Part shown: piece after piece, positions 44,566-64,000 of the stretch
Layout of the letters: every line of letters starts with the position of its first letter
How positions within the stretch are numbered: the stretch's first letter is position 1
Translations under genes and position numbers: made by a program
The notes under the pieces: model-generated
The model's database searches: none
What the model saw: only the letters and a program-made list of their open reading frames with translations
Told to the model about the DNA's origin: nothing
Assembly: GCA_024704765.1 (NCBI GenBank)
Contig: JAKMXF010000016.1
Coordinates: 34,292-98,291, forward strand
Length of the DNA: 64,000 nucleotides
Source: Oopsacas minuta
Lineage: Eukaryota; Animalia; Porifera
Reading direction: 5' to 3'

Positions 44566-45014
44566 CAGACTTACCAACCCTTCGTTGATAATTCCCTGGA
44601 TTGAAATCTTAAAATCCCTGGATCATTTTACTTCTCACTTATAAACCAGTTTGGAAGTCACCATTATGGAGTTGTTGGGAGATAATTCGTAGAGATTATT
44701 TGCATAGACATATCGGAGATATTATATAACTCAACAAGAACCCGTACGTCTGAGAAGGAGCTTGTAACTCCCGAACTAAAGATCCAGGGAAATATCTGGA
44801 TCTTTTTTTAGGTTATATATAATCCAGTTCTGAAGAATAACTTATTGATTGTTATGTAACACTTATAGTTATTGACATCGTAGTTGAAAATTCACAATTT
44901 ACCCGGCCGATACAAACTTTCGAATCCCTGGATTCTCCAGTAAATCCCTGGATTCCTGGATCAGAGGTCAAATCCCGGGGTAATCCAGGGATCCCTGGAG
45001 GGTTGGCAAGTCTG
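44566..45014. mobile_element. hAT-like MITE without matching TSD
   Basis: TIR CAGACTTACCAACCCT / AGGGTTGGCAAGTCTG with repeated ATCCCTGGAT motifs. The flanks ATCACAAT and CATGACCT differ. Confidence 0.7.
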
Positions 45015-45052
45015 CATGACCTACTGACCCATCTGACCCATTTGCAACTCTG
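45015..45052 (-). mobile_element. Orphan terminus of the GACCCAT-repeat hAT family
   Basis: CATGACCTACTGACCCATCTGACCCATTTGCAACTCTG matches the element end at 61244-61298. It is followed by the 8-mer GCCGCTAC. Confidence 0.85.
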
Positions 45053-45347
45053 GCCGCTACACATGTTATTACCAACATTGTTGCAAAAAGTAGCTTATGC
45101 CAGTAAACCTGAGCTTGTACCTATAATGGAACTAAGTGGAGTGGGACAAGGAAGAGCTAGACAGCTGATACAAGCTGGTTACATAAGTGTTAAGGAAATC
45201 GCACGAACTGAACCCCTAGAGCTAGTCAATAAGCTGAAACAATTAAACATCAAACAAGCAAAGCAGATAATAGCATCAGTTAAGCTTGTACTTCAGGAAA
45301 AAGCTGAGGCTCTTAGAGAGGAGGCAGATGAACTAATAAGTCTATAG
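45053..45347 (+). pseudogene. HELQ: HELQ C-terminal piece (3' fragment)
   Basis: PLHMLLPTLLQKVAYASKPELVPIMELSGVGQGRARQLIQAGY...QAKQIIASVKLVLQEKAEALREEADEL* matches the HELQ C-terminus ([26 protein letters not shown]...QAKQIVSSAKMLLHEKAEALQEEVEEL). Confidence 0.88.
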
Positions 45348-45489
45348 TGTATGATCACTGTTATGCTGAGTATTATCCCTTTCCGTTTACTCTAATTAAT
45401 CCAATATTGATTAGTCGTATATACCAAATGTGTACTTGTAAACACTTTCAAAAGATTGCGTTTTATGCCAAATCTCAGTCGCTAAGTTA

Positions 45490-48100
45490 CAAACTAAGTG
45501 AGTTTGGGTTTAAGTGCTGATTTTAACAGTTTATACTCATCTGATTCTAGATCTTCCGTCTTCTAACCGTTTCCATCTACATATAGGAAATTGTAGAAGA
45601 TATCTACTGCAGCAGCCATTTTGGTACAGTAGCTGTCTTGTTTGGATTTGCTTTTCTGTAATTCTGCAAGAAACATTGGTTAAATACAACAGAACTGGGT
45701 TAGTACATAAAGCATACTTGTCAAGTGCTAGCCATTTCGTAATCCATGCATTACTCGGAATTCTACAAGAAATGCATGGATGAATTACTGAAAATAGAGT
45801 TTTTTCTTCAAAAATAGCCAGAGATTACCATTTATGGATATAGCACTTGAAAATCCAGCTTTTTGCAATACTATCCCTGGAAATTATTATGTGAATGGTT
45901 GTATGTATTTGTAAGTTCAACAATATATTAAAATGATTGTATTTTCTATTCATAGCTACAAACCAGCACAAATCTTTACAATTTCATGCCACATACACTC
46001 CAATTGCAACTGAAAATCCTCCTGCCATAGAGTTGTCCAAGCTCCTTCCAGGTTATTAGCCATCCAATTCATTAATACATCAATGGCATCATCAATCGAC
46101 TCTCCTAACGGTTTTTTGCATAAAATCATTGGAATATATTTTAAACTGTTTCGTGAGAGCTATTACAATCGCCCTTAATATTAAACTTTTATCTTTTTCA
46201 ATGCTGCAACGGATTTCTCGAGTATTTCCTCCATTCTTCTGCTAGAACTTTGTTATCTTCTGATTCTTGGATTAATTCTTCCCAATTCAAGCTTTGAGGA
46301 ATCTCTCTCATATATTCCAATATTACCTGAAAACAACGTATACATTATGCTTCGGTTAATCTGGCCTCAATGTGACCCTATTAAGCCGAGTCTACGGTAT
46401 TAATATAAGCAACACTATCAAAAATACATTAGCAATTTATACTGACGTATAGTCGGACGCTAATTATAAGAAAATATTTATACATCTTACCTGTGTATTG
46501 TTTATGCTCACGCAACTGTTCTCGTTGAGCTCAAAGATTGCTTGAGATTTCTTATCCTTCTTGTCCAGATCACCTATCATAATCTTAATCATCTGGGAAC
46601 TGTAGAATTTACCAATATCACAGATCATTTTCATAACCTTTGCTATAGAAAATAGAATTACAGTAAGTAATCTGTTGAAATATGTTTCCCATGAATAGAG
46701 AGCTAGAATGATATCCAATTAGTTACCTATAATGCGTGATCCCTCTTCTTCATGATTCCAGCTCAATTGTCTATTGAACTGATAGCACTGCTCAAAGCAA
46801 ATCGCGATATCAATAGCAGATGACGTAACTTAAATTCTGTTGTTGTCTTGTATTATTACTTCACGCGTATCAATCTCTCTTGCTCGTTTCACAGTTCCTA
46901 GATAGTATTATTTATGTAATGGGATCGATGGAGCCAGCAAACTCCCACAAAGAGAACACGGATATGTCAAAATCAACGCTTATCTGAAATTGTGCAAATA
47001 TGCTGCAAATCCATCAAAGTAACATATATTTTCATCGGTTATATCAAACTCTGCTTATATAGGAGTATTTATCGCTTTCCCCCTGAGCTTCGATAAAACT
47101 GAAATTTGAATGGATTGGCAGATATTCAAGTACATGTACAATCTCACCTATAGAAATATTTCTGGCTGCATCCATCCAACTGAGTACATAAGGCTTAAAC
47201 CAGACTTGATAATCCTCAAAGATGTATTTCTTTGCTTTCATTACTTCATTGATAATGTGCTCTTTGAATTGACAAATATCTTTAACATGCTCGTGTAACT
47301 AATGGATCAGGAAGCTGAATTTACAATACAATTACATAGACCTTAATAAATATCAGATTTACTGACCTTTAGTATTAGAATAGCTAAAGTGAATTGCTTC
47401 CTTGTATTCTCTTCAGTCATCTTCTTGTCTTCTTTAGAGATTTGCTCAAAGTATCCTTTGAAAGTAGATGAACTGAGCAGACCAGAAACTTCTTGAGAAA
47501 CAATTCCATCCAGAATCTGATATGTAATATCGAAGTAACTTATTCCAGTCTGTTCAAAAGCATGAAGAGGAGAATATAGTATTTACAAACCGTCGTAGGT
47601 AAATTGATAGTGGTAAGGAAAGATTGGAAGTTGTTAAGTAAGGTTAGAAATGGTCAAGCCTGCCCCATAGAGTTGTACAGGTGAAGGCACAAAGTAGCAA
47701 GGCATTTCCCTAGCGTTCCCGGCCCGTTCCACAGGCCTTGAGTTACATGAAATCACACAGTACGCCTGTATCAAGACAATTATCCAATAACTAACCTGTG
47801 GATACAACAAATGTATTGTAATTAAATCCTGTGCTACCTCAGCACATAGATTAGTTAGTGTAGTAATCCTGATAGTATGAGTTGATTCATCAACTGTTGT
47901 AGTTAACTGTAAAGGCTGTGAATTAGCATTAAGGACTTGATATCAGCTGTGTATGTCTTCCTTTAAGTTTGGCTCAATTTCAAGGTCCAATTCTAAGTTT
48001 GTATCAACTCTCTCTAAATGAATTATTAAATTAATAAGCTGCAGCAAGTACTTGTTATATAATGTACAAATAGAGAGATTTCCTGTATGCTTTGCACGTA
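45490..48100 (-). pseudogene. UNC13D/BAIAP3-like (Munc13 homology domains), decayed multi-exon
   Basis: YQVWFKPYVLSWMDAAR and SSAIDIAICFEQ...RQLSWNHEEE (MHD1-like); DAIDVLMNWMANNL...W (MHD2-like). In-frame stops in several exons; extent approximate. Confidence 0.65.
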
Positions 48101-49351
48101 CTAATAACTGTACTGAGTATAGACACAGCATTGAAATCACTAGACATAGTATTCCTTATATTTTCCGTAAACGGTGCAGAGCCAAAATTTAATAGATTTT
48201 ACCATCAGGTGTGCACTGAGTAGCAGGGCTTAGATTTGACTCAATGCGATATTTTTACAATACATTTTCCCATTGAAGTTGTATTAACTTATCGAATTTT
48301 CCAAATTCCATTAGGTGTTTAAATCTATAGAAAAAATTTCTGTATAATTTTCCGCATATTTTGCAATACAAATCAAAAATTGAAATTTCCATAACTTTGT
48401 ATTATAATTATTTACCTATTTTTTTGAGGAAATTAACGTTGTAGTAATAGTTTGTATAACTTCTTTGAGTATGAATTGTCCTGTGTTAGAGTTTGGAGGG
48501 AATAATATTCTACTCTGCTTCAAGAGAGATATTTCATGATTAAAGATTTCTTCAATATTCTCTACTACTCCTTAGTTACGTCATCAGTTAATGATGTGTG
48601 TTGTGTCTCCCAATTTGTAATTATTTCTTCAAGATATCCTATATGCAGGAATAATGCACTGTTTGATATAGGAATATAATGATTCGCATTGTTTTCTTTA
48701 TAGAGATCCCAAGGTATTTATGGATACAACTGTTCTCATCGATAGATATCTTTCAACAAATCACAATTGTAGTCCATCCTACTCATTGAGAAATATCAAA
48801 ACAGAAGAGATGAAGAAATGAATTCACAAGTTTGTGAACAGCTGTTTTCTTCACTTCGAAGAATTGCTACTCAGATCGATTACATGCGTCTTAAATATGT
48901 ATTTTACACCACAAGATATTTCCTATACACTCTGATTCTGAGGGTTTACCCTTCCTGGAGGCTGTTGAGGTGGTGAAATCTAAAACATGATGGTACTTAG
49001 ATTGGAAGGAAATTAACAATAAATTACAAGATAAATTGCTTTGTAGCCGTGTGATAGTAAGTAAAAAAGTGGCAAGTCATATCAAGGAAGTAATAGAAAT
49101 GTCATGGCAGAAATATCCATGGTTATGGTTATACAAGGTAGTTGTTCTGTCATACAACACAGCACTAATGTATTTCACATCTTCAATGTCACAAGTTTGG
49201 GATGAAGGAAATATTATTCTATAGTTTGATATTAATAGTAATTTCTATCTATGACACACTTCAAAAGTCATTGCTTTATTACTAGAAAGCAATAAACCCA
49301 AAACATTATGCATTCCATAAGTTATTGTATTAGAGTGTATGTGTGTGCTTA

Positions 49352-49560
49352 CTAAATGGGATAATTAGTACAATACTGATATACGATGTATTCTGGTAAC
49401 GAAGATCCATGAGGGCTACATTGAGGACAGGAAAAGTACTCAACATCATTGGTGTCATCGATTAGTCCTACACATGGTTTAGGTAACCACTGGTGACATT
49501 TCGAACACTCAATCATGTTACTAGGCGCAAATTCTGGCAGGTTACAGAGACCATTGACTG
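49352..49560 (-). other. Isolated PHD-finger-like remnant
   Basis: CNLPE...MIECSKCHQWLPKPCVG...FSCPQC (His replaced). The surrounding sequence is decayed; possibly transposon-derived. Confidence 0.55.
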
Positions 49561-50781
49561 ACAGAAGGTATGCCCACACGTATGATCAATATCCAATTCA
49601 TTCAAATATCAGAATATGCCAATGAATGAAATAGAGGAATGTAAGTTACAACTATGAATTACATCATGTAATACTCGAGTATTGAATTAAATTAATAGAT
49701 TTATTAACGCTTACGAATAGTTATAATAATTAGCCAAATAAATCCAATAAAAATACAAAAATTCGTATTAGTGGATAGAAATAACCAGAGGGGGATCTGT
49801 TGCGTGAGATTTAAACTCATATATTGTAAAGGATCAGTAGCGTGCGATATTTACTAAAAATCGTAAAATATTCCAAACAGCACAAAAAGTCAATATTTAA
49901 CAAATTTTATTTACATTTAATGACAAAGCTAAAGTATTTCTGAAAATTAAACTCTGAAATTCATGAAAACATAGTTTTGAGAAAATCGAAGAAATATAAT
50001 AAAGTAAAGGATTTTGCAGAAATTATTGAAGGTTTAGGAGTGATTATTTCCAGTAATCTTAGACACCCAATGTGGGAAGTATTGTCACATTTTGGTAAAT
50101 GTTAAGTTCCCATATTTGTAAAATATATTCACCTACATGTATATTGAATTAATACGAAAATGATAGTTTAATACATACATTTTCTATTATTTTCTAAAAC
50201 ACACTAAAAGTTCAATTTTGTTGAGATGGGATCCTTCTGTTCCTGCTTTAGAGGTACTGAGAGGACGGTTGAAGAAGAATCGCTAATATACTCTTGTGCG
50301 AGGCAACCCTCGTACCATGTAGACGATACCCTTATGGGCGTCGCGGATGCTTTACTTCATATAAGACGCTGAATGAGGCCACAATACACTGTAAAGTGCA
50401 TGGGCCTCCACCGGCTGAGAATTTCCCTAATATTCTGTATTATATTTAGCCTATATGTTTTAGTGTTTTAGCTTTTTAGTAACTATAGATTTTAGCATAT
50501 TATCTGTACCTTCGAAACTTGTATATTGTTTCAATTATCTTTTCAACATTTGATAACATAACTCAGCATGAGATAATAATAGAGGTTATAGGGCATATAT
50601 AAGAGTTGGGATAATAATTCAATATTTTTGTTGTGTTTCTTCACGGCTGGAGGAGTCATCAGTTAAGTTGCCATTCGCTTAAGACACCACACAATTTTGA
50701 TTGATTAAAAAATTATCAAACAAAAGGTGTTCTTTTGGCATTCTTTCCCTTCTTTGATGCCTTCTTATCAGTTACCTTGTT

Positions 50782-51273
50782 GTTATGCTGTATTTGACGT
50801 ACCAGTGTTGTGAAACACTCTATCCACATTGAAATGAAATTAAGCTGATGTTTCTATGTATTACCCCCACAGCATGGAGGCGATTGTCTCTCCCTCGTTA
50901 GAGGAGATCCTCCTAGATTCGGACAGATCTATCTTGTTGCCTACAACCAAGAATGGGATGGATAGATTCACTTATCTCTTGATGTCTTTTTGTATTTCCC
51001 TGATTTCCTGCAGATTGAATCTATCTATGACAGAGAACACCAACAGATAGCCGTCACATTGATGGTAGAACTCTTCCCGAATAATTCCACACTCATCAGT
51101 TCCTGCTGTATCCAGGATCTGTAAGATGTATAAACTGTCCTTCACTCTAGCCGGAGCCTCGTATACCTCCTCTATCGTAGGAGTATATCCACACACGAAT
51201 TCAGTAAAATGAGACATGTCTTACCAACAGCACCTACTCCTAACATGAGGATTTTGATCTGTTCCCTCTTCAT
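50782..51273 (-). pseudogene. Intronless Ras-family small GTPase pseudogene
   Basis: G1 GVGAVGKT, G2 YTPTIEE, G3 DTAGTDE, G4 VGNKID, G5 ETSA. Frameshift after G1 (~51205) and at least three in-frame stops. Confidence 0.88.
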
Positions 51274-51945
51274 TTTCATTCACTATTCTGTTGAATAATT
51301 ATATTATTTAGCAACACTCATTTATAACTTTTCTAGGATTTAAACCATTACAAAATGCTGCAGTCAATAAACTAGAAATTTCCTTTCGTTTTGATTAAAC
51401 AATACAAATACTCTTTCAAGTCAATTGAAGGATAATATTCGTAGTATCAATCTAGATATAACATTCATTTATTTTAGCAAACCATCAAACATATTTTCAA
51501 AATTTTCAAAATTTTGTTATTTAGTAAGCCATAACATTAAATTTCGAATTTTGTATAAGAATAACCTTACTCAGTTTGACAGTGCCAAATACTCGATTTG
51601 GACAAAGAACCACAATAATAGCTATCCCAATAAGGATTAAGAATGAAAGAAGAATAGTTGTATCTTGGAGAGGTGTCTAAAGGGGTCTGTTCAGGTGTCT
51701 ATAGGCAAAATTAAATAAATCGACCCTTGCTAGCGTAGCAACTAGATGTGACATAGGAATTTGAAAATAGCTACATACGTAGTTAATACAACAATTAACT
51801 TGAGTGAATGACTTATTAATTAATGACACATTCAATGATTAGATACAGCAAGCCTTATGAATAATAATTATATATTAATTAGTTTCGAAGTAATTTCGTG
51901 TATTAAGTAATGCGAGAAATATGGAAATTTAAAGAAAACAAATTA

Positions 51946-52776
51946 CTACAAAGTTATAACTTCAATTTTAGGAATGTGTATTATATAACTCACATTTCCG
52001 ATAGAAGATATCAGTAAAGATTCTGGGATAATTGGGGAGCATAGTAACTGTTGTTGTTGTTGATCCCATTCAATAGCTTCTAAAGCCCATTCAAAATAGT
52101 TTGCGCTGTTTTTGGGATCCCACAAAAATATTTGGGAATCCGAAAAAGACAAGGGAGAGCTATTAGCGGTTTGATATTCAGTTTTAACCGTGTGTGTGGG
52201 AGAAGGGATACAATCTGAAACTAACATAGCATTCTCGCCTTTATATATATGGCGTTGGCCAATGCTTATTCCTTCTGTCCAGTCGATCTCATCACTATTT
52301 GATCCGGCTTCTAGTACTGAAGATTGTCGTGGAAACCAAACAGAAGGATAGGAACTAACAGAATGGTTCACTCCAGTATCTACATGTGGTTCTGGTAACT
52401 TACTAGCAACAACGATATTAGGAATGTGTTGAATATTTGAAGGAGAATCCTCTATTATTGAACTATGTGTAAGTGATGGTAATGAATTCTTAGTGATCAG
52501 ATCAGTTGTATTTCTAGAACCAACTGAAACTGAATTTAAAGATGGTGTTTGAAAATCTCTAGGATCAATTAGATATCTATCTCTCAATTCAATGCTAACG
52601 ATCGGTACACAAATATTTACATCTGTGTCTGTGTCTGTCTGTATCTTGGTCATTCTCATTGTGAGAACAGAGAGCAAGTACACGTATAACCTGGGTTCTC
52701 CTAGTTTATGATTCGGGTAGGATTCGTGACTACTAGATCCCTGTACTTCTGATGGCATACTGCTTTTATCGCTCAC
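51946..52776 (-). CDS. Ser/Pro-rich 276-aa ORF, unknown (may be an exon of a larger gene)
   Basis: Long open frame for AT-rich DNA, but no recognisable domain. Confidence 0.35.
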   Translation of the reverse strand: MSDKSSMPSEVQGSSSHESYPNHKLGEPRLYVYLLSVLTMRMTKIQTDTDTDVNICVPIVSIELRDRYLIDPRDFQTPSLNSVSVGSRNTTDLITKNSLPSLTHSSIIEDSPSNIQHIPNIVVASKLPEPHVDTGVNHSVSSYPSVWFPRQSSVLEAGSNSDEIDWTEGISIGQRHIYKGENAMLVSDCIPSPTHTVKTEYQTANSSPLSFSDSQIFLWDPKNSANYFEWALEAIEWDQQQQQLLCSPIIPESLLISSIGNVSYIIHIPKIEVITL

Positions 52777-53769
52777 TATAGAATATGGAAATGTAGGTAT
52801 ACATGTAAATCAGGAGAAATAGAGAGAAGATTATAGCAGTACATTAGCAAATTGATGGGAAGTAGATACAAGAATGTCTTGCCTACTATGGCGTAACCTC
52901 TACAAACGGCCCAAAATACTACTCAGCTCCCCATTCTTGCTAAATTCCACAGTTCATTTGTATGGGACGAGGTACCATGAATTCGCTCTATATATTTCTC
53001 TCCGTTTCCACGTTTGTGGAGGTTTCACTGCAATAGGAGGGAAAATTTGCTTTCGGGAGGTTTTTGGAAGACAACAATCAACATAAACACGAAAAGGCGA
53101 GACAATTGGCATAGTTACATCAATTGTATCATGGTTTGTGCGAAGGAAAATTAAAAAAAAGAACTGTAGAGGATAAATACATGTGGAATGGAATTGAGTT
53201 GAGGTACATGCATTTGTTCGGATTATATGATTGTCATGAGTCAGAATTTTCTGAATTGTAACAAGTTCGAATCGATTTTGGTCTATTGAAACAAGTACGA
53301 GTCGATTTCCGACTGTTGTCACAAGTCAGAATGGATTTTCTGACTGTTGTCAAAGTTTTACAACAAAAAATCCATGATCCGCCATTCTGCAGACTTTACT
53401 AACAATTAGTCCAATAAAAGTCCATCCAAACACAAAATTACCATGAAGTTCACATCCCGCCCCTAGGTAGCTTAATAACGAGTAATGGCTGGATATAATA
53501 CTATGGGTAGTAGTTATATTTGGAGTAACTAATTAGTATTAAGCTTTCTATCTACAACTTTAACTACAAATCTACAATATAACAAGTACTGCTACAAAAG
53601 AAACACCAAAGCAGAAGTATGATACTAATTATAGGTTACTGATAACTATCAAAACAGTTAGACAACTGGATATTGTTTCCTTATTTCCATGATAAGGTTG
53701 GAGAAACTACCTCGTCCATATTCTTTCTGCCAACAAACTTCAGATAAGTGAGTATCTAAAAGTATGGGG

Positions 53770-54600
53770 TTAGTAGTCATGCAATTCCTCAGCCGTTTCT
53801 TCGCACCACCCCATATACTCTCAGCTGTTTGTGTATGTACGCCTGTAGTAGGGTCAACAAAATTGAAACTATGGTTGACGGTGAGATGCTGAAACTTGCA
53901 GCAGGGATAGAATTATACGAAGCCCATTCGTCAGAAAGTATGGTAGTGCCCGGAAGAATATATCTCTGGATGAGAGGGATTGATGTTGCAGCCAACCTGT
54001 CTTGAACAGGTGTCATAAAGGTATCCTTTGTTTCTCTATCTATCCCTCCAAATACACATTGACCTGATAGCATACGACCTCTTGAATACTTTCGATGTCC
54101 AAACTTTGATTCATCTATTTCTACAATATGCCCAGGCCCTCCAATTGGTTGAGGATTGACTAAAAATTCTTCAACACATAGGTCTCTGAGGGAGTTCTAC
54201 CAGTCTGTTATAGTAGGCTCTCCCCACCCAGATTCTTGTTGATTCGAAATGACTGATAAATTCTGTAAAGAAGCCTCTATCTTTACGATCACAATTATTC
54301 CTATGATAGAAATTGAGTATATTCGGCCAGTTTAGTACCCCTTTTACTTTCTAGTACTTGACATACAGAAAAATCATAGTTTGACCCTGAATCTGTGTAA
54401 GTACTCCAAAATGGTGTTCAAATGGATTATTTTGCATAAAAGATGATAATACATAAGAGAATCCACATTCTCCAGTCATATATTCTACAAGTTTTGGTAG
54501 AGCAATGCTTGAAACTATCTTGTACAGAAAATAACTCTTGTTGTCAGATGGACGATGCTAATTACATCAACCATATTCCAAACTTCTCATTCTTGGGGGA
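53770..54600 (-). mobile_element. Merlin (IS1595/IS1016-like) transposase remnant
   Basis: DW*NSLRDLC...IGGPGHIVEIDESKFGHRKYSRGR...VFGGIDR...LPGTTILSDEWASY, then frameshifted TVNHS.NFVDPTTGVHTQTAESIW. Termini not resolved. Confidence 0.85.
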
Positions 54601-55699
54601 TCTCCACGTCACATTATTTAGTGTTTATGTCATCGAAACTATAGACGATGAATTTCCTCTGCTCTTCTTTTGTAGGAGGACTACCCTACAGTACCAGTGA
54701 TGATGAGTTCATTTTTCATTTTTTCGTTTTGTAATTAACGCAATACATTTTATATACAGCTGATTTTAACTGTAATTTTCGCAGCTAACTTCTACCTCTA
54801 ATTATTTCTTAATCCTTCATGCAGTTCTGTAGTTATGAATATTCAAGTTCTCGAATCAATCATAATTCCATCTTTAATCGCCTATTTATTCACAAAATAT
54901 ATTTAGAAAATATGAAAACAATTATTATTTCGATAAGGACATATAAATAATATCCTGGTTTATCATCCCCGCCCATTTAATCTCCCTCCTCGGCAATTTT
55001 ATTATTTTATTACATATCTTCATTTAATACTTATAATCGCAGATGAACATCTTCGAAACAAGCTAATTATTTAACACTAGCGCCCTTCGCTTGCTAGGTC
55101 GCTGAGCAGTGTGGCTAATCATGTGATTTTTCGAAAATCCAAAAAAGGTGGCAATGGCATCATAATTTTGTCAGGCGTGAATTTTCGTCCAAGACTCAAA
55201 CCTGTCCGAGTCAGGCCCAAATACCCCTCGCTGCATGGCACATTCACCAGAATTTCATTTTACATTTAAAGCATAGAAAGATAGTTTGAGTGTTTTATGT
55301 GAACTGCGAATTATAATTCTCTCATATAATTGTACAATAATTCAGATTATAGAGAGGAAGTGAATATTAGTTTCCCATATACAGTGTAAGCTTAATACGA
55401 ACACCAACGTACCGTCCGTATGGATAAAATTTATTCGCCTTTCCAGAGTTCATAAATCGGAGTAATATCCATTGAGTACGATTGTAGGGACCTGATTATG
55501 TACGAATATTCTTAGTCTAATAAGAAATTCGTATTAACGAGATAGTTTAAATAAATTAGTAAAATGACGCTAAGCAAAAAATAAAAATAAAAATAAAATG
55601 TCGCCCCCGCTGCTATTCTATTTCGCAGAAAAAGATGGATGAGAAACAAGTAATGTATTCTACATGGCCTTATGTATAATTATTGTTAATATATTCTTA

Positions 55700-57790
55700 A
55701 GAATAGACAATACTAACCTGTGTACTGATAAGCTGCAGTTTATAAGAGTCAACCTCTGATTGAAGATTAAGTATTTTCTTTTGAGATTCTTCCAGAAGAT
55801 TCTGGAACCTTCCTTCTAGCTCCTTATCTCGTTGTAATCTTAATCTGCTATCTTCTCTGTTCCTACCCCTCTCTCCTTTCTCTCGCATCTGTATACTTTG
55901 ATCGAAATTTATGTAGAACTTTGATCAAATTTTCTTATGTCGAACTTTGACCGAATGATGAAAAAGGCAAATTTTGATCAAAGTTCTACTAAAATGTCTC
56001 CAGTCGAACTTTGATCGAAAAATTGTAGAACTTTGATCGAAAAATGGAGAAAATACAACAAAAAAATCCAACGATACGCCATTTTACAAAGATTACTAAT
56101 AATCAATCCAACATAACTCCATCCAATCATAAAATTAGCATACATCTCACAATAACTTTATATTTCATTAGTTAGAAAGAGTACCATTGTGAGGGGATTA
56201 GGGATTTATTTCGCTACCTTATGGCTCTGGGAGTATTTATTCGTGTTCGTTATTAGCTACTAAAGGACGGGAGTGTGGAATTTATGCTAATTTTATGATT
56301 GAATGGAGTTTTTGGATTGATTATTATTAATCTTCGCAAAATGGCGTATCGTTGGATTTTTTGTTGTATTTCTCCATTATCGATCAAAGTTCTACAATTT
56401 TTCGATCAAAGTTTGACTGGAGACATTTTAGTAGAACTTTGATCAAAATTCGCCTTCTTCATCATTCGATCAAAGTTCAACATAAGAAAATTGATCAAAG
56501 TCCTACATAAAATTCGATTCAAATATACACATCCTTTCTCTCTCAGGAGAGCAGAGTTCTTCTCTTTCAATTCTCTCACTTTATCTTCCCACTTATTTTT
56601 ATCAGCTAATTTATCCTGTAGCTCATTCGTAGCTGAGGTATACTCTTTGATAAGTTTGGCTACTTCTTTCTTCAATGAGCCATTCTCTTTATCAACAGTT
56701 ACGTTCAATTGATAAAGATTCTCGTGATTATTCTTCCAGGCCCTCACTTCCCCTAATTTTGTTTGTATCTCTTCTCTCAGTTTTACATTTGCCAGTTCAG
56801 TTTTCATATTTAAGATTAAGGCATCTATCTGTCCCTTTTGCTCCAATTCCTCTCGTGACTTTCTAAAGTTATATCTAATGAACCATGGATAAATATTCTA
56901 TAATCACTCGGTTTGAAGGATCATACCTGTTGTTACTGATGGCTTTATTCTAGGAGGGAGAGGGTGCTCCTGTGGAGGAGAATTTAAGGCAACTGATACT
57001 CTCTCTTCATGTCTCGATAGTGTACTCTTGAATACAGGAGGAGATTCACCCGGGCTTGATAGGTACTTTTCTTCTCTGAATTCTGAAAATTGAAAGTAAA
57101 TGAAAATTAATCACATAACAGCTGACTATAAGAATTGTATTATTTCATTTATGATAATTTCTCCTGAATTAATCACCGCTAATACTCACTAATCAACCAA
57201 ATAAAGCTCTAATTAAATACCAGATGTTTGAAACTATGATTACGAATTCACCTAAAAGGTGTGAATATCTACACATTAGAAAATATACATGGCAAATATT
57301 GGATGAGAATTTATCAAGGTGTGAACATGAATAGGAAACATAGGGGCCGAACGAGTATAATTCCCAAGGGAGTGGGAGCATTATGTAATTGTGTGGCTAA
57401 TAATTCTCTTGATAAAAGCAAACAATATACTATATACAATTATACATTAATTTTGACTATGATTAATAGGGTCACATCGGGATCACACATTTATACCCGT
57501 TTTAGTGGAGCTATTCAATACACTAAAGTGATTATAAGGAAATCACGAGGGGGACAGCCCCCTGTGCCTAGTTTGTCCCCTCTCCCGTGCCGAGTTTTGC
57601 AGCAGCAGGTGCTCCATAACCAGCTTCTGTACCTTCAGTGACGGAAGGTCAGAACTGTTGGAAGCAGTACCGGAGGCCCTTGATTTGGGTGTGGTGTAGG
57701 GTTGGGAGGGAGACCCAGGAGTATCTGAGTCTGAACATTTGCGTTTACGAGTTGATGGGAAAATAGTGTTGCTAGGGGTGGGGTAACATC
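55700..57790 (-). pseudogene. Fragments of an unidentified coiled-coil gene, interrupted by a foldback element
   Basis: E/K-rich frames 56530-56860 and 55715-55890 flank the insertion. Ser/Pro-rich exon-like pieces at ~56920-57085 and ~57640-57760 (RKRK motif). Confidence 0.4.
55897..56523. mobile_element. Foldback element with ~250-bp inverted arms
   Basis: 55897-56150 is the reverse complement of ~56270-56523. Arms are built of GAACTTTGATC repeats; candidate TSD TATAC on both sides; core GAGGGGATTAGGGATTT at 56191. Confidence 0.85.
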
Positions 57791-57864
57791 ATGTGATGAT
57801 TTGAAAGCGTGGTGAAACGACAGTGAAAATTATATAGGAATTAGACAACAATAAATACATCTAT

Positions 57865-58390
57865 ATTTGTAAATCTCAATTGTTGTTTGTTTGTTTGTTT
57901 ATTGTTTGTTTGTTTGTTTGTTTGTTTGTTTGTTTATTTGTTTGTTTATTGTCTGTTTGTTTGTCCGTTGTCAAGACAAGGATTTACGGTATGCAATTTT
58001 TAAATTGTCGCATAATTATGTATTTGTTGTGTTGAATTCAAAGAAGTAAATAAAATTCAATAAAACTTCACTAAATATAGCGAACATGATGAATCCGATT
58101 TTCACACTTTTGGATTAATCATATATAAATTTATTGTTGTTTTTATGAAAATAAAGTAAACAAATTAGCCAAATCTCAAAATTTGGGTAGATACGTCCCT
58201 CAACGGCTAAAAAGGGGCTTGATCATAAAAATACTTCAATAACATATATGTCATATCCGTATGTTTGTGAATTACATTGTGTTAAATATATCTATATTAA
58301 AATACTCAAACGGGCCGTCATTTGGAGAAAAATGGATACCGTGAGGCGCAATGCATCGAGTTCATCGCGAAGCGACGAGCTAAAGGCTCC
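57865..58390 (+). mobile_element. Most complete copy of the (GTTT)n interspersed repeat
   Basis: Colinear with 13195-13545 and 26890-27660. Confidence 0.7.
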
Positions 58391-58431
58391 TATATAAATT
58401 TGACACACATGCACATATAATTAATATATGT

Positions 58432-58500
58432 TATAGTCAGAGGGGCCGGATGGATTACGGATTGGATTATGATTTGGAGTCATCCGCCCCTCTGACTATA
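58432..58500. repeat. Short palindromic element (~20-bp stem)
   Basis: TATAGTCAGAGGGG(C)CGGATG ... CATCCGCCCCTCTGACTATA. Confidence 0.75.
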
Positions 58501-60224
58501 GTGGGGTATCTCTAATTGTACAGATTCCCTAATCATCCACCTGCCAAAATATGAGTACTATGTGTACAATACAGTAAGTTTAAGAAATTTGTTACCCTAC
58601 TTAGAATTCAGAATATTCACACAAAAAAATATTTGAAATAGTCATAAACTGAATATTTGCATGAGTATTGAGTTTTCATTATACAAAACTCTGAGTCAAG
58701 TAAAGCACAGTCAAACCCGACTTTCCTAACTCTGTATAGTTCTTTCTAATGAATTTTACTATTACAGTAATACTCCATGTAATTCAGCTACAAAGGTGTA
58801 AACAAAGTTGATAATATAGGAAAATAGAAATGGAATTTCTTGGTCTAGCGTGGAGGTATTAAATATGACTTTAGTAATATTTTATGAATCAAACTAATTT
58901 CCCCTGACACTTAACAAAATTCAATTATTCTACATCTTATGGGCCGACACCAGCTGTCCAATACAAAATATGTGAAAGCATAAGAAGAAATAAAATATAC
59001 TCTATACATGTATGTATGCCCAGAATTGATTATAGAAACTGGAAGGCCCCAGGACGGATTTTCTGAACACAGATGTATATTGACCCGGCACGGACAAGTC
59101 CGATTCTTGGATTAAAATTCACACCTAAGACGGAAGTATGATAAATCACATGATTGGGCAATGTCAGCCAATATAGGTGTTAGATAGTGGGAATTAAAAC
59201 CACAGGTACCCGATAGTGATAATGAAATACTGCCCGACCTCATGCTTAGATGGATTCATCTGCCGAAACAGCAATATATTAATAGTGGGCTGAAAGATAG
59301 CCAGAAGCGGCACAAGGGAGGGCCAGGGGCATGCGCCCCACCTCATTAAGGTAAGCATGCCCCAGCTTAATAACCTGTACCCCAACTGTGACGTAATTGT
59401 GCCCTACCAGTAACGGCTGGCTAACTCCGCAACTGAGGATAGTTCACACGATAATTGTTAGTATACGTAAGTCTGTACCTTGAACAGATACTGTCAAAGA
59501 GCTAATGTTATGTTGAGACGAACTATGCTCATTCTGTGAGCCCTGTGAGAGGATAGGAGGATATACAGGCTGATTATTGGAACATGCTTGTGTTGTGAAA
59601 CTAACGCTGTGATTGGTAATAGAGGGAGGATGAATGGAGCTCGCGGTCATTACAGAAATAGACCTCTGGGGGAGAGAGGAGGGATCGTACAGTGGTCTGG
59701 CGTTCTGTAGCTTCTCGTAATGTTGAGTTATTGCCAGTGGTCTGTGATTGTGGCTTTGTGTCCTGCTCCATTTTATGTAAAATACTAATTTTGCTGAAAA
59801 ATGCATGTTTTAACTATTGTTCCATGGGTGGCAAGAATAGCTCCAGATCAATAGTTGGGCCTGGGGTAATAAGTTTCAAATTTTTCTGGGGTTAAACCCC
59901 CTGGTCCCCCTTACTGTCTCTCGCTCTTGGCTGCCCTTAGACTCCCAAATTTCAACCCCCTCCCCAGAAAAAAATCCTGTACGAAACCCTGAACTTTATA
60001 ATCTCTGAATAGATTTATTCAAGTTACAATAAACACTTACATTGAATACCACAGAAGTAGCTGTACAGTGAGTCTGTACATGAAAGAAAAATAAGTATTA
60101 TTCCAAGACGTCCAAGATATTCGTATAATGCACACACTGTTCACGTGGTCCTGCGTAATAGGGACGAGGGGCGGCATTTTATTTTTATTTTTTGCTAAGC
60201 CTAATTTTACTAATTTGTAGCTGT

Positions 60225-60635
60225 GAAATGTAGAATCTCCTTGATTTGTGGAAGCAGAATAAACTTAGGTTTCCATTATTATCAATAATTGCCATGAGAC
60301 TATTGGTAATTCAGGCATCCTCATCCGAAAGCGAGAGACACTTTAGTGCCTTTACTGCTCGGCATATCGTAACATCTCAATGGAATGCAATGTTGCCAGA
60401 AACTATCGAAGCTCTCTCTGTTGTGTTGGAAAGATATAAGAACAACTTGATTTAATTATTGTGTTAGACTAAATACTTACATTATACTTGTTCCTAATAA
60501 TGAAATACATAATGGGTCAGAATGGGTAAGAAAATAATAAATGGGTCATGACCCATGGGTCAATGGGTCATGGGTCACTACTTCGATGGGTCACATGGGT
60601 CATGGGTCACTTCATGTGACCCATTTGCAGCTCTG
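60225..60635 (+). mobile_element. hAT element A: 3' part with dimerisation-domain remnant
   Basis: WKQNKLRFPLLSIIAMRLLVIQASSSESERHFS...LPETIEAL (hATC). ATGGGTC repeats; terminus CATTTGCAGCTCTG followed by ATTCAGAT. Confidence 0.88.
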
Positions 60636-60742
60636 ATTCAGATGCAGTAGAGGTTTCATACAAAGCTTACTATCTTCGAGTGCTGCTCGCTGTTCTTGTC
60701 TAATCAGATTCTCTGAAGAGATACAGCACTTATGGCCGCTAC
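60636..60742 (+). pseudogene. HELQ: HELQ middle piece
   Basis: FRCSRGFIQSLLSSSAARCSCLIRFSEEIQHLWPL matches HELQ [33 protein letters not shown]. It joins seamlessly to 45053 through the shared GCCGCTAC. Confidence 0.88.
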
Positions 60743-61298
60743 CAGAGCTGCAAATGGGTCACATGAAGTGACCCATGACCCATTTATTATTTCCTGACCC
60801 ATTCTGACCCATTATGTATTTCATTATTAGGAACAAGTATAATGTAAGTATTTAGTCTAACACAATAATTAAATCAAGTTGTTCTTATATCTTTCCAACA
60901 CAACAGAGAGAGCTTCGATAGTTTCTGGCAACATTGCATTCCATTGAGATGTTACGATATGCCGAGCATTAAAAGGCACTAAAGTGTCTCTCGCTTTCGG
61001 ATGAGGATGCCTGAATTACCAATAGTCTCATGGCAATTATTGATAATAATGGAAACTTAAGTTATTCTGCTTCCACAAATCAAGAAGATTAAAACTCTTA
61101 CTTGTAGTATTCCAAACATTTAGTATAATGACCATCTCTATTAACTCTATTTAGAAGGTTTTCTAATTGACAAATAACTCTTTTAAGCCTACATTGTATA
61201 TAAATACAATTTTGATGGGTCATGACCCATTAACGCATGACCCATGACCCACTGACCCATCATAAAAAAGTGACCCATCTGACCCATTTGCAGCACTG
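60743..61298 (-). mobile_element. hAT element B (same family as A, inverted)
   Basis: 60743-61085 is the reverse complement of A; the other terminus is GACCCATTTGCAGCACTG at 61281-61298. Its flanks GCCGCTAC and ATCTGAAT do not match each other. Confidence 0.88.
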
Positions 61299-61317
61299 AT
61301 CTGAATTCTTCCGCTAC

Positions 61318-61880
61318 CAGAGATGGAACCGGTCAGCTTTTTCATGACCTCACCCGACCGGCCGACTGGTAGCTTTGACTATGCACTGCCTGGCCGAAAG
61401 TATTGGAACACCCTGCCACTTGTGACACAAGTGGCACACGGCGAGAATATGTTGAATATTCTGTGGATATTGCAGAAAGTAGAAAATCTCTTTTCTTCAA
61501 GGTTGATGAATTAATATTTATTATAAAATGTATGAAATAATTTTCAATAATTTGTCTATAACTAATGTGGCATTTATATTGGTGCTATGTGCTAATTGTA
61601 GCTCTGGCGTTCGAATACTTTGGCCAGGCAGTATATAATGGATGATTATACACATAAATCCTATTTAATACAGAAATGTAGAAAAGATAGAAATATTGAA
61701 ATGTAGACTAATAAAGAAATTTTGAATATATAGAATATGTACGGAATTTTACGGCCAAAGTCCGTTTAACGCTGCCTCCTTTAGCACAACTAGATCAAAT
61801 TCAGACTGCCCATATTCAGAAATTATGACCGGCCGGTCGAGATCTTCGACCGGTACCCGACCCGACCGGTTCCATCTCTG
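61318..61880. mobile_element. hAT MITE C
   Basis: TIR CAGAGATGGAACCGGTC / GACCGGTTCCATCTCTG; TSD TCCGCTAC / TTCGCTAC (7 of 8). Confidence 0.88.
61384..61633. mobile_element. Tc1-type MITE nested in hAT C (same TIR family as 26980-27493)
   Basis: CACTGCCTGGCCGAAAGTATTGGAACAC / GTTCGAATACTTTGGCCAGGCAGT. Confidence 0.8.
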
Positions 61881-62344
61881 TTCGCTACCTTACATACAGT
61901 TTCACCTTCTCCTCCTGACACTATATGACACAGCACACTTAGCTCCCTCTATAGGCGTTGAAAGCAAGTCTCTTCCGATATTTTATTTACTTTATATTCA
62001 TAATAACAACAATGCATTTGCATATGAGAATCTTGAAATGCGAAATTGGAATCTATCCACCTAGTTGTGTACTTTACTCATATTACCCATTCACTAAGTT
62101 CTGTTCCGCTAATACTATAATACTAACCGGACTAACAAACACACAGCAATCGAGATTTAATAATATATTTGTAGATGTTTTCTAATCTAACATTAATTAC
62201 AATTCACAGCTTTTTGCAAATTAATCAAAATCAGCTAGAGGTTTCATTTCAACTTCTAGTAAGGAGTAATCGAGTAAGGGAATTATAATTTTGATATTTT
62301 CAAATCTATATTTATAATATTGGAAAAATATTTATCTGATCCAG

Positions 62345-63149
62345 GATCCCATAATCAGTCGGGTCCAGTGCATTGTGGCATTTACTCGGGGGTAGGGATT
62401 GAGTCTCCTGTATTCGATCAAGTGAGGGAACGGATATACTCAGAGGTAGCCTCTCTGGTAAAACAGAATGAAACAGTCCCTACTACATGCTAGAGCTTAT
62501 TCGTGTAGCTCAATCACGCAATACTGATTATCTGAGAGAATCTGGTCTGAGTTCTCTGAAGCGTGTGATTAAAGATTTTCAAAATCCTGATCTGCTCGAT
62601 GCTCAAGGCTTCTCTGCTATTCCACAACTTCCCCCCACCCCTTCATCTTTCATACCTTCTACACAAGTGTCAGAGAGACTGCAGGTGGCGAGGAGACAAG
62701 AGACCGTGTACTCTCCCACCAAGAATTTTCCCCTCAGACACTGCCCGAACACGAACCTGTTCGGATCAAGTGAGAACGTTGATGAGCGAAGTGTCTCTCA
62801 AGCTTATCAGGTGTCTGAAGCCGTAGACTATATCCACCCTCTAGTTGGCAAACCTGAAGACTTTGAGGCAATACACATAGCTGTTTCTGGTGAAGATGAG
62901 AGTGACATCTCAGAGGTCACTTCCCATCTGAGTGAGGGTGATGTATCTCCATGGAACAAACGATTTCATGAAGTTGAGAATTATATCATTGCTTTTTTGT
63001 ACAAACACAATGATGAAAGTTTTAAGCCTAGACTCCTGGAAACGATACATCAAGGTATACTTTTGCTGGTGTCACAGTTATTCCCTCAGGAAATGGTGTT
63101 ACGTGTCCAGAGTACGCTAGGTAGAGATTTGAATGACATTCTTTCCTAG
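62345..63149 (+). pseudogene. PCM1: PCM1-like C-terminal region with frameshift
   Basis: VRERIYSEVASLVKQNETVP (shift at ~62475) YYMLELIRVAQSRNTDYLRE matches PCM1 LRDTIYSEVATLISQNESRPHFLIELFHELQLLNTDYLRQ. Later FLYKHNDE resembles the PCM1_C domain; stops follow at 63147. Confidence 0.65.
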
Positions 63150-63557
63150 AGACCAGCTCTGTGTGAGCTGAGTTATCTCAGAGAATACTCTGATTACATC
63201 TAGGTAACGACGCATCATGAAGTAACAGAATCCCATATTGTATAGTAGATTGATTGCACTTAGGGGAATAGTCATCCTTGTAAGGGTTTGATGTGTAATG
63301 CGAATATTCTTCACAGAGGGTAAACCCTCGTGAAAATCTCCCAGCTGTGTGTGAAGCTTCAGTAGTGCAAATAGACTGAAGTAGCCGAGGTCCCTGTAGA
63401 GAGGCTGTCTCCCGTACTTATTTCCAGCCTAGAAAATGTTAAGTAAAATAGAGAATGAAATAATGAAATGAGTGAACTTTGTATATGAAATCTACAAAAT
63501 AAAGTGCCATAATTAGAAGTAAAAGGAGAGAGCGCTAGATCCAATAGCATAAGATGT

Positions 63558-63744
63558 ACAGCTAACGCTCTATATCGAAGCTCAAGGTACAGCGATGTTT
63601 ACTTCGATAGCGGAGTTCGATATAAATGAATAACTTATGGAATTTTATCTTACTTTGACGGTTTTGGACCATATTTGTTTTCAGACTTCGCTATCAGCGG
63701 GTATTCGATATATCCGTGTTTGACATAACGTGAGTTAACTGTAT
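63558..63744. mobile_element. pogo/Tigger-like MITE remnant
   Basis: TACAGCTAACGCTC ... GTGAGTTAACTGTA ends with internal TTCGATAT repeats. Confidence 0.55.
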
Positions 63745-64000
63745 TAGAGAGGTTATGGAACAATAAATAGATAAATACTTACCTCTTTAGCTACTTCTGG
63801 ATCTTTCGTCTTATGATATGCCTACAGCTGTTCATTTATATTAGAGAATTTAATGAGAGTATTGAGTGCATTCAATACTAGCTCAACCGTCCAGAGGTTG
63901 TCTGAGTCTCGTAGCAGTTGTCTCTCTTTGAGGGAACGCTTTTTCACCTGAGAGCGCCAAATCAAATAGCTTTCATGATGCTTGAGGAATCCGTTAATGA

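What the first reader, a model, noticed from the sequence alone, without database searches (positions are those of the whole stretch)
45015..62170. HELQ gene shattered into permuted and inverted pieces, every junction marked by a hAT end and a swapped 8-bp TSD
Seen: the HELQ coding order L-M-R now reads R (+, 45053-45347) ... 15 kb ... M (+, 60636-60742) ... L (-, 61299 upward). GCCGCTAC ends M next to hAT B and begins R next to an orphan hAT end. ATTCAGAT begins M next to hAT A and, as its reverse complement, abuts the other end of B at 61299-61306. Rejoining through these 8-mers restores ...VAEEFRCSRGFIQ...EIQHLWPLHMLLP... in frame. Inference: two inverted hAT insertions 107 bp apart, recombination between them, then a ~15-kb inversion. 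Ac/Ds-style alternative transposition is another route. This is a base-resolved record of transposon-driven genome rearrangement.
Basis: partly seen in the sequence, partly recalled or inferred. Interest (0 to 1): 0.8.

Follow-up and report, generated by a model that had tools for sequence, protein, structure and literature searches.

The report
Helicase pseudogene fragment rearranged by transposons
A 0.6-kb dead copy of the tail of a DNA-repair helicase gene (the real gene is intact elsewhere) took three small transposon insertions, and two inverted hAT copies then flipped the 107 bases between them. This is a clean but ordinary case of transposon-driven rearrangement.

Summary

- **Not the HELQ gene.** An intact, intronless 942-codon HELQ/Hel308-type gene lies on contig C133. 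The window holds a ~0.6-kb duplicated fragment covering its last ~148 codons.
- **Empty-site copy.** A sister fragment on C209 is uninterrupted and has each target 8-mer once.
- **Pre-flip copy.** A second sister copy on C10 is 97-99% identical to the window. It has L-[hAT B]-M-[hAT A] in the original order and orientation, with ATTCAGAT on both sides of B.
- **The flip.** The window differs from C10 by a turn of the 107-bp piece M. The crossover lies within the last ~70 bp of the two inverted hAT ends. Variants shared by both arms within each contig show gene conversion between them. This is the known exchanged-TSD mark of ectopic recombination.
- **The 15.6-kb displacement of R.** This comes from an older internal break of hAT A, shared with C10. 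An inversion fits, but neither breakpoint carries a signature, so it is not demonstrated.

The scan has already noted other swapped-TSD hAT pairs on other DNA of this genome, probably the glass sponge Oopsacas minuta, and I found one more on C321.

The parts
44566..45014 (.). Unclassified 449-bp TIR element (MITE-C, TIR CAGACTTRCCAACCCTYC). Its right end abuts the hAT remnant at junction J2. Its flanks ATCACAAT / CATGACCT do not match.
   Evidence: other genomic copies share the same ends
45015..45052 (+). Orphan 5' terminus of hAT A. The 38 bp correspond to the last ~56 bp of B minus an 18-bp slip.
   Evidence: (D2)
45053..45060 (+). TSD copy GCCGCTAC from the hAT A insertion, R side
   Evidence: a single copy in C133 and one (GACGCTAC, one base different) in C209
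45053..45513 (+). Piece R: the last 97 codons plus stop (to 45347) and 3'UTR-homologous sequence of the helicase fragment. The HhH domain is recognisable.
   Evidence: 88% identical to C133, 94% to C209
60234..60635 (+). hAT A: only the 3' arm survives (~348 B-equivalent positions). It is truncated internally at junction J1 (60233/60234) and contains a remnant of the hAT dimerisation domain (60231-60419).
   Evidence: (I1, I3, I5, I8)
60636..60742 (+). Piece M, 107 bp (35 codons), bounded by ATTCAGAT (60636-43) and GCCGCTAC (60735-42). It is inverted relative to L. C10 has it in the other orientation.
60743..61298 (-). hAT B: a complete 556-bp internally deleted hAT. Here it is flanked by GCCGCTAC / ATCTGAAT. 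In C10 it is flanked by ATTCAGAT on both sides.
61299..61317 (-). Piece L2 (VAEEFR), with the reverse-complement TSD copy ATCTGAAT at 61299-306
61318..61880 (.). MITE2: a 563-bp TIR element (CAGAGATGGAACCGGTC...) with an 8-bp TSD. In helicase-strand orientation the TSD is GTAGCGGA / GTAGCGAA here and perfect in C10. The element is absent from C209 and C133.
61881..61933 (-). Piece L1: the start of homology to the helicase gene (…IVSGGEGETVCK). Everything beyond 61933 is unrelated flank shared with C10 and C209.

Best explanation
The window holds a ~0.6-kb duplicated 3' fragment of an intronless HELQ/Hel308-type helicase gene. It is a pseudogene fragment; the working gene is intact on contig C133. 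After the copy was made, three non-autonomous TIR elements inserted into it, each with an 8-bp duplication: MITE2 (GTAGCGGA), hAT B (ATTCAGAT) and hAT A (GCCGCTAC). A and B lie head-to-head, 107 bp apart.

Step 1 is older and is shared with the sister copy on C10. hAT A was broken internally about 348 bp from its 3' end. Its 5' tip, its TSD and piece R now lie 15.6 kb away in the opposite orientation. The simplest account is an inversion with one breakpoint inside A. This step is inferred.

Step 2 happened after C10 and C16 diverged by about 2%. Homologous exchange or template switching between the last ~70 bp of the two inverted hAT 3' ends turned the 107-bp piece M around. That left each hAT end next to the other element's 8-mer. 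The state before the flip (C10) and after it (the window) are both observed; the mechanism is inferred from them. Nothing suggests a function. It is a neutral scar in a repeat-rich contig end.
For: - The intact 942-aa ORF on C133 has DEAD, Helicase_C, HTH_61, POLQ_helical and HhH domains, and matches the POLQ helicase domain and Hel308 among solved structures.
- Homology of the window to C133 is limited to C133:322880-323702.
- C209 carries L-M-R uninterrupted, with the same non-helicase upstream flank as the window and C10. That makes it the empty site for all three insertions.
- C10:7486-12462 equals the reverse complement of window 57477-62397 at 97-98.7% identity. In C10, M has the orientation of L, and B has ATTCAGAT on both sides.
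- The family is a true hAT. Seven of ten other copies have perfect 8-bp TSDs. Dimer_Tnp_hAT hits lie in the long copies and in arm A.
- A-type and B-type diagnostic sites (a 22-bp indel about 70 bp in, and sites further in) stay with the same outer flank in both contigs. This places the exchange in the terminal ~70 bp.
- Three central sites are shared by both arms within a contig but differ between contigs, which indicates gene conversion between the arms.
- The same exchanged-TSD pattern occurs at C321:733208-735500.
- The pattern is the published mark of ectopic recombination between inverted transposon copies (PMC2775673).
Against: - Both the orientation of M and the 15-kb linkage therefore rest on the assembly alone.
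- If the genome is Oopsacas minuta, the assembly is a hybrid SPAdes build (k up to 99) made from different adults.
- A crossover confined to ~70 bp, of which 41 bp are exactly identical, is short for homologous recombination.
- J1 and J2 carry no TSD or repeat signature. About 150 bp of A is missing. MITE-C at J2 has unmatched flanks.
- C10 shares only 2.8 kb beyond J1 and has no R at all. The inversion model for R is therefore untested.
Confidence: 0.7

Rival explanations
1. Assembly artefact. The assembler chose the orientation of M, or mis-joined contig C16 between R and M. In reality the copy looks like C10, or R sits elsewhere.
For: The presumed assembly is a de Bruijn hybrid with k up to 99, scaffolded and gap-filled, from several individuals. 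The two hAT arms share a 171-bp exact inverted stretch, which is longer than k. Both C10 and C16 end within a few kb of the shared segment. An earlier follow-up on another swapped-TSD hAT pair in this genome raised the same worry. No read check was possible.
Against: The exact inverted identity next to M is only 41 bp, shorter than both k and the read length. The link from M and its 8-mers to the type-diagnostic 22-bp indel ~70 bp inside the arm is therefore at k-mer and read level. Seen from M, A-type and B-type ends are exchanged between C10 and C16, however the 171-bp repeat is resolved. At least one real terminal exchange remains. The e2-TSD-R junction is likewise local.
Confidence: 0.15
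2. Transposase-made inversion (hybrid-element insertion or alternative transposition). One hAT at GCCGCTAC inserted a sister-chromatid copy into ATTCAGAT 107 bp away and inverted M in a single step. C10 would then be the derived state.
For: This model gives the same TSD pattern as recombination (PMC2775673; my own derivation). A and B are close relatives, 1.4-3.2% apart. hAT elements tend to move locally (established knowledge of Ac). The exchange maps near the termini.
Against: The model predicts identical copies, but A and B differ by type-specific indels kept in both contigs. A flip by recombination is still needed to explain why both states exist. Reversed-ends transposition would lose the inter-element segment and create a new TSD, and neither is seen. 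The breaks that displace R lie inside A, not at its termini.
Confidence: 0.1
3. R was not inverted. It belongs to a further, inverted duplicate of the whole L-B-M-A-R block, most of which has since been deleted.
For: The block is already present at least twice (C10 and C16), while only one e2-TSD-R junction exists in the assembly. The region is a patchwork of segmental copies. One example is 45510-48648, which matches C319:2099-5246 at 93-94%.
Against: Within C16, L, M and R each occur once and complement each other exactly through the two 8-mers. That is more economical as a rearrangement of a single copy.
Confidence: 0.2
4. One reading: the functional HELQ gene itself was shattered.
For: The pieces translate in frame to the helicase C-terminus.
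Against: An intact 942-codon gene lies on C133. The window shares only ~620 bp with it, and the upstream flank is unrelated.
Confidence: 0.02

Closest known systems
Inversions made by ectopic recombination between inverted transposon copies, e.g. Galileo in Drosophila buzzatii, inversion 2z3 (PMC2775673)
   Same: Two copies in opposite orientation, exchanged TSDs, a single target copy in the unrearranged sequence, and evidence of exchange between the copies.
   Different: The scale is 107 bp rather than megabases. The superfamily is hAT rather than P. The setting is a pseudogene fragment. The parental two-insertion state is actually observed, on C10. The crossover lies in the terminal ~70 bp rather than the middle of the element.
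Ac/Ds alternative (reversed-ends) transposition in maize (bioRxiv 10.1101/2021.03.08.434479 and the work cited there)
   Same: hAT superfamily, 8-bp TSDs at rearrangement junctions, and two nearby elements.
   Different: Reversed-ends transposition uses a 5' and a 3' end that face each other, loses the inter-element segment and makes a new TSD at the target. Here two 3' ends face each other, the segment is kept with both old 8-mers intact, and no new TSD exists.
Spacer inversion in quasi-palindromes by template switching between closely spaced inverted repeats (from my own knowledge of bacterial and yeast work; not looked up here)
   Same: ~400-bp inverted arms with a 107-bp spacer, inversion of the spacer, and gene conversion between the arms.
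   Different: There is no experimental system here, and the mechanism cannot be told apart from crossover using sequence alone.
Other swapped-TSD hAT pairs noted by this scan in the same genome (s1-242595, s1-266772, s1-277139), plus C321:733208-735500 found here
   Same: The same signature in the same genome. The C321 pair belongs to the same hAT family.
   Different: Those inverted segments are 1.2-3.6 kb. This locus adds a sister copy in the unflipped state and a third, displaced piece.

Membership tests
hAT superfamily transposon (elements A and B) | 8-bp target-site duplication | tested here: met
   Seven of ten other genomic copies have perfect 8-bp TSDs and one has 7/8. B in C10 has ATTCAGAT on both sides. 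The two ends of A carry GCCGCTAC.
hAT superfamily transposon (elements A and B) | Short terminal inverted repeats | tested here: met
   CAGAGCTGCAAATGGGTC... at both ends, followed by subterminal GACCCAT repeats.
hAT superfamily transposon (elements A and B) | Transposase with the hAT C-terminal dimerisation domain in autonomous relatives | tested here: met
   The best PF05699 hits in the genome lie inside the long copies of this family, such as C310:1125689, C323:26028 (648-aa open frame) and C296:269697. Hits also lie in arm A (window 60231-60419) and in C10:9506-9691. A full transposase was not inspected.
Inversion by ectopic recombination between inverted TE copies | Two homologous copies in opposite orientation flanking the inverted segment | tested here: met
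   Inverted arms 60234-60635 and 60743-61090, 98-99% alike.
Inversion by ectopic recombination between inverted TE copies | Exchanged TSDs, with a single target copy in unrearranged sequence | tested here: met
   Empty sites are on C133 and C209. The two-insertion parental state is on C10.
Inversion by ectopic recombination between inverted TE copies | Chimeric copies after the exchange | tested here: inconclusive
   The exchange window is the terminal ~70 bp. The only candidate marker there is a 7-bp indel in C10_A, and a 39-bp deletion in C16_B removes the reciprocal site.
Inversion by ectopic recombination between inverted TE copies | Inverted orientation physically real (spanning molecules) | not testable with these tools
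Alternative (reversed-ends) hAT transposition | New TSD at the breakpoints and loss of the inter-element segment | tested here: not met
   M is retained with both original 8-mers. J1 and J2 have no matching 8-mers.
Functional HELQ/Hel308 gene at this locus | Helicase core (DEAD, Helicase_C) plus winged-helix, ratchet and HhH domains in one reading frame | tested here: not met
   Only the last ~148 codons are present, in three pieces. The full set of domains is on C133.

The most novel reading that the evidence does not exclude
Closely spaced head-to-head hAT pairs in this glass-sponge genome are recurrent flip-flop switches. The exchange is focused at the transposon termini, possibly helped by transposase binding or by hairpin formation at the GACCCAT-rich ends. 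Both orientations would then coexist as polymorphisms, which would make hAT pairs a systematic source of small inversions in this lineage.
Probability: 0.15. Interest if true: 0.55.

Novelty: new member of a known kind. Interest (0 to 1): 0.3.

Why it matters
This is a tidy, base-resolved example in which three states survive in one assembly: the empty site (C209, C133), the two-insertion parent (C10) and the flipped product (the window). Usually only the product is seen. It also shows that inverted hAT copies in a hexactinellid sponge interact through both gene conversion and exchange, and that they do so at several loci. It has no bearing on HELQ function, because the gene is intact elsewhere. 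The mechanism class has been textbook knowledge since the Drosophila and maize work.

Tried and rejected
- **More genome loci.** The long hAT copies, C319 and the left end of the C321 pair could only be seen as hit tables or pattern hits.
- **Second MITE-C copy.** I looked for one that could have mediated the 15-kb inversion. There is none in the window or in the held contigs.
- **TSD for MITE-C.** I tested whether the inversion model restores one. It does not: ATCACAAT on one side against the CTACATTT the model predicts.
- **Sequence left of J1.** I tested whether 59400-60233 is the interior of the long hAT type. It is not; it matches other repeat families.
- **Different paralogs.** I considered that M (99% to C133) and R (88% to C133) come from different paralogs. 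I rejected this because the contiguous copy on C209 shows the same unevenness, about 6% divergence in M against about 12% in R (my count from the sequences; one search gives 89.8% identity for the whole exon). The window pieces are 96% (M) and 94% (R) identical to C209.
- **C10 and C16 as simple haplotigs.** They share only about 5.7 kb plus dispersed repeats.
- **Relatedness of A and B.** Pairwise distances within the family were not decisive.
Full report
**What is in the sequence.**
- A 38-bp hAT terminus (45015-45052) is followed by GCCGCTAC and a 97-codon open frame that ends at 45347.
- About 15.6 kb to the right, the terminus of a truncated hAT (A, 60234-60635) is followed by ATTCAGAT.
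- Then comes a 107-bp coding piece (M) that ends in GCCGCTAC.
- Then a complete 556-bp hAT (B, 60743-61298).
- Then ATCTGAAT and, on the minus strand, the piece L.

GCCGCTAC occurs nowhere else in the window on either strand, against 0.2 expected per strand. The translations join in frame.

L is split again by a 563-bp TIR element with its own 8-bp duplication (61318-61880). The orphan hAT end abuts another 449-bp MITE (44566-45014).

**This is not the gene.**
The window is G000:C16:34292-98291 and ends at the contig end. The genome has three further copies of these pieces.
- Contig C133 carries an uninterrupted, intronless 942-codon ORF (C133:320501-323329). It has DEAD, Helicase_C, HTH_61, POLQ_helical and HhH domains. 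Among solved structures it matches the POLQ helicase domain and archaeal Hel308.
- The window shares only C133:322880-323702 with it, minus a 200-bp indel. That is the last ~148 codons plus some 3' sequence.
- Upstream of 61933 the window continues with unrelated sequence. C209 and C10 share that sequence; C133 does not.

So C16, C10 and C209 hold copies of one duplicated 3' fragment, a pseudogene fragment. The neighbourhood is a patchwork:
- eIF3L/Paf67 fragments at 63120-63998;
- an IS1595-like transposase remnant;
- a Ras fragment;
- a repeated 220-codon ORF;
- a 3.1-kb block paralogous to C319.

**The three states.**
- C209 carries L-M-R uninterrupted, with one copy of each target 8-mer. 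It is the empty site for MITE2, B and A.
- C10:7486-12462 is the reverse complement of window 57477-62397 at 97-98.7% identity.
- On C10 the order is L1-[MITE2]-L2-ATTCAGAT-[B]-ATTCAGAT-M-GCCGCTAC-[A...], all in one orientation. This is the parental state with two insertions and proper TSDs.
- The window differs from C10 only in that M is turned around together with its two 8-mers.

**The elements are true hATs.**
- Seven of ten other copies have perfect 8-bp TSDs.
- The family has short (~0.5-0.6 kb) members and long (~2.5 kb and more) members.
- The best Dimer_Tnp_hAT hits in the whole genome fall in the long members, some within open frames of 648 aa and more. Hits also fall in arm A itself.
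- The arms facing M are therefore the 3' (transposase C-terminal) ends of both elements.

**Where the exchange happened.**
I aligned the four arms.
- Sites that distinguish A from B in both contigs stay attached to the same outer flank in C10 and C16. These are a 22-bp indel about 70 bp from the terminus, two substitutions at about 112-115, and three sites at about 375-404. The exchange that turned M must therefore lie in the terminal ~70 bp.
- Three sites in the central part are shared by both arms within a contig but differ between contigs. This indicates gene conversion between the inverted arms after C10 and C16 separated.
- Exchanged TSDs between inverted copies, with single-copy targets in unrearranged DNA, are the published mark of ectopic recombination (PMC2775673).
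- The hybrid-element-insertion alternative gives the same TSD pattern but predicts identical copies. It would still need a later flip to explain why both states coexist.
- Reversed-ends transposition predicts loss of the inter-element segment and a new TSD. Neither is seen.

**Could it be an assembly choice?**
- The assembly statistics are 365 contigs, 61.46 Mb and a window GC of ~35%. These fit the published Oopsacas minuta genome. An earlier follow-up note of this scan calls the genome a glass sponge. I did not verify the identity by sequence.
- That assembly is a hybrid SPAdes build (k up to 99) from Illumina and corrected PacBio reads of different adults, followed by SSPACE, pilon and GapFiller.
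- The exact inverted identity next to M is 41 bp (I5), shorter than k and the read length. The link from M and its 8-mer to the diagnostic 22-bp indel is therefore local.
- A 171-bp exact inverted stretch further in could have been resolved either way. Under any resolution, A-type and B-type termini are exchanged relative to M between C10 and C16, so at least one real terminal exchange remains.

**The displaced piece R.**
- GCCGCTAC next to the 5' tip of a hAT at 45052/45053, and GCCGCTAC next to the 3' terminus of a hAT beside M, show a single insertion (A) between M and R. The ends of that insertion are no longer joined.
- The real breaks are inside A. J1 lies at 60233/60234, about 348 positions from the 3' end and 8 bp short of the deletion junction typical of the short family members. 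J2 lies at 45014/45015, 38 bp from the 5' tip.
- J1 and the 2.8 kb beyond it are shared with C10, so this event is older than the flip.
- An inversion of 45015-60233 would explain the orientation. Against that, about 150 bp of A is missing, neither junction has a repeat or TSD signature, MITE-C at J2 has unmatched flanks, C10 diverges at 57477 and contains no R, and the 15-kb linkage depends on the contig.
- I give the inversion model a little under even odds. The alternative is a remnant of a further inverted duplicate.

**Recurrence.**
- On C321 two inverted copies of the same family, 1.2 kb apart, have flanks ATTTGAGT/ATCCCATA and ACTCAAAT/TATGGGAT. That is the same exchanged pattern.
- The scan's notes list further swapped-TSD hAT pairs on other pieces of this genome.

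**Verdict.**
- The 'shattered HELQ gene' framing is wrong.
- The 15-kb inversion is plausible but unproven.
- The kind of event is well known. Interest is modest.

Noticed in passing
G000:C321:733208-735500 (partly in L040:255-2004): A second inverted pair of the same hAT family, 1.2 kb apart, has exchanged 8-bp flanks: ATTTGAGT...ATCCCATA and ACTCAAAT...TATGGGAT.
   Followed up: partly
window 61318-61880 vs C10:8006-8568: MITE2 differs at 1 of 563 positions between C16 and C10, whereas hAT B and the L flank differ by about 1.7-1.8%. This may reflect recent conversion of this stretch, or chance.
   Followed up: no
window 63120-63428 and 63825-63998, minus strand: Two exon-like pieces match eIF3L (Pfam Paf67, profile positions 43-194 of 397). 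They end in a stop and unrelated sequence, so this is probably another gene fragment. The contig ends at 64000.
   Followed up: partly
window 62487-63149, plus strand: A 220-codon ORF with no Pfam match belongs to a repeat family with about ten copies at 77-98% identity (C10, C246, C363, C302, C332, C55...).
   Followed up: partly
window 53485-54669: A 1.2-kb repeat carries an IS1595/ISXO2-like (Merlin-type) DDE transposase remnant (53792-54073). Copies at 97-98% identity lie on C10, and the neighbouring block 54668-55441 has the opposite relative orientation on C10.
   Followed up: partly
window 50975-51217, minus strand: An 81-codon open piece matches the Ras family (Pfam PF00071). It is either an isolated fragment or an exon.
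   Followed up: no
L013:502-3330 (G000:C133:320501-323329): The HELQ/Hel308-type gene of this genome is a single 942-codon exon. Relative to the fragment copies it has a 200-bp indel just after the stop codon.
   Followed up: partly
G000:C296:269697, C323:26028, C310:1125689 (hit tables only): Long members of the hAT family have open frames of 144-1198 aa around the dimerisation domain. They are candidate autonomous elements and could not be fetched.
   Followed up: no
C10:12700-12900 (L014): Read by eye, there is a mariner-like transposase N-terminus just beyond the point where C10 and C16 stop being homologous. This was not tested with a tool.
   Followed up: no
window 55553-55607 and 60168-60216: About 50-bp inverted matches lie 4.6 kb apart, and the right one ends 17 bp from junction J1. 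They are the terminal sequence of a multi-copy repeat family.
   Followed up: partly
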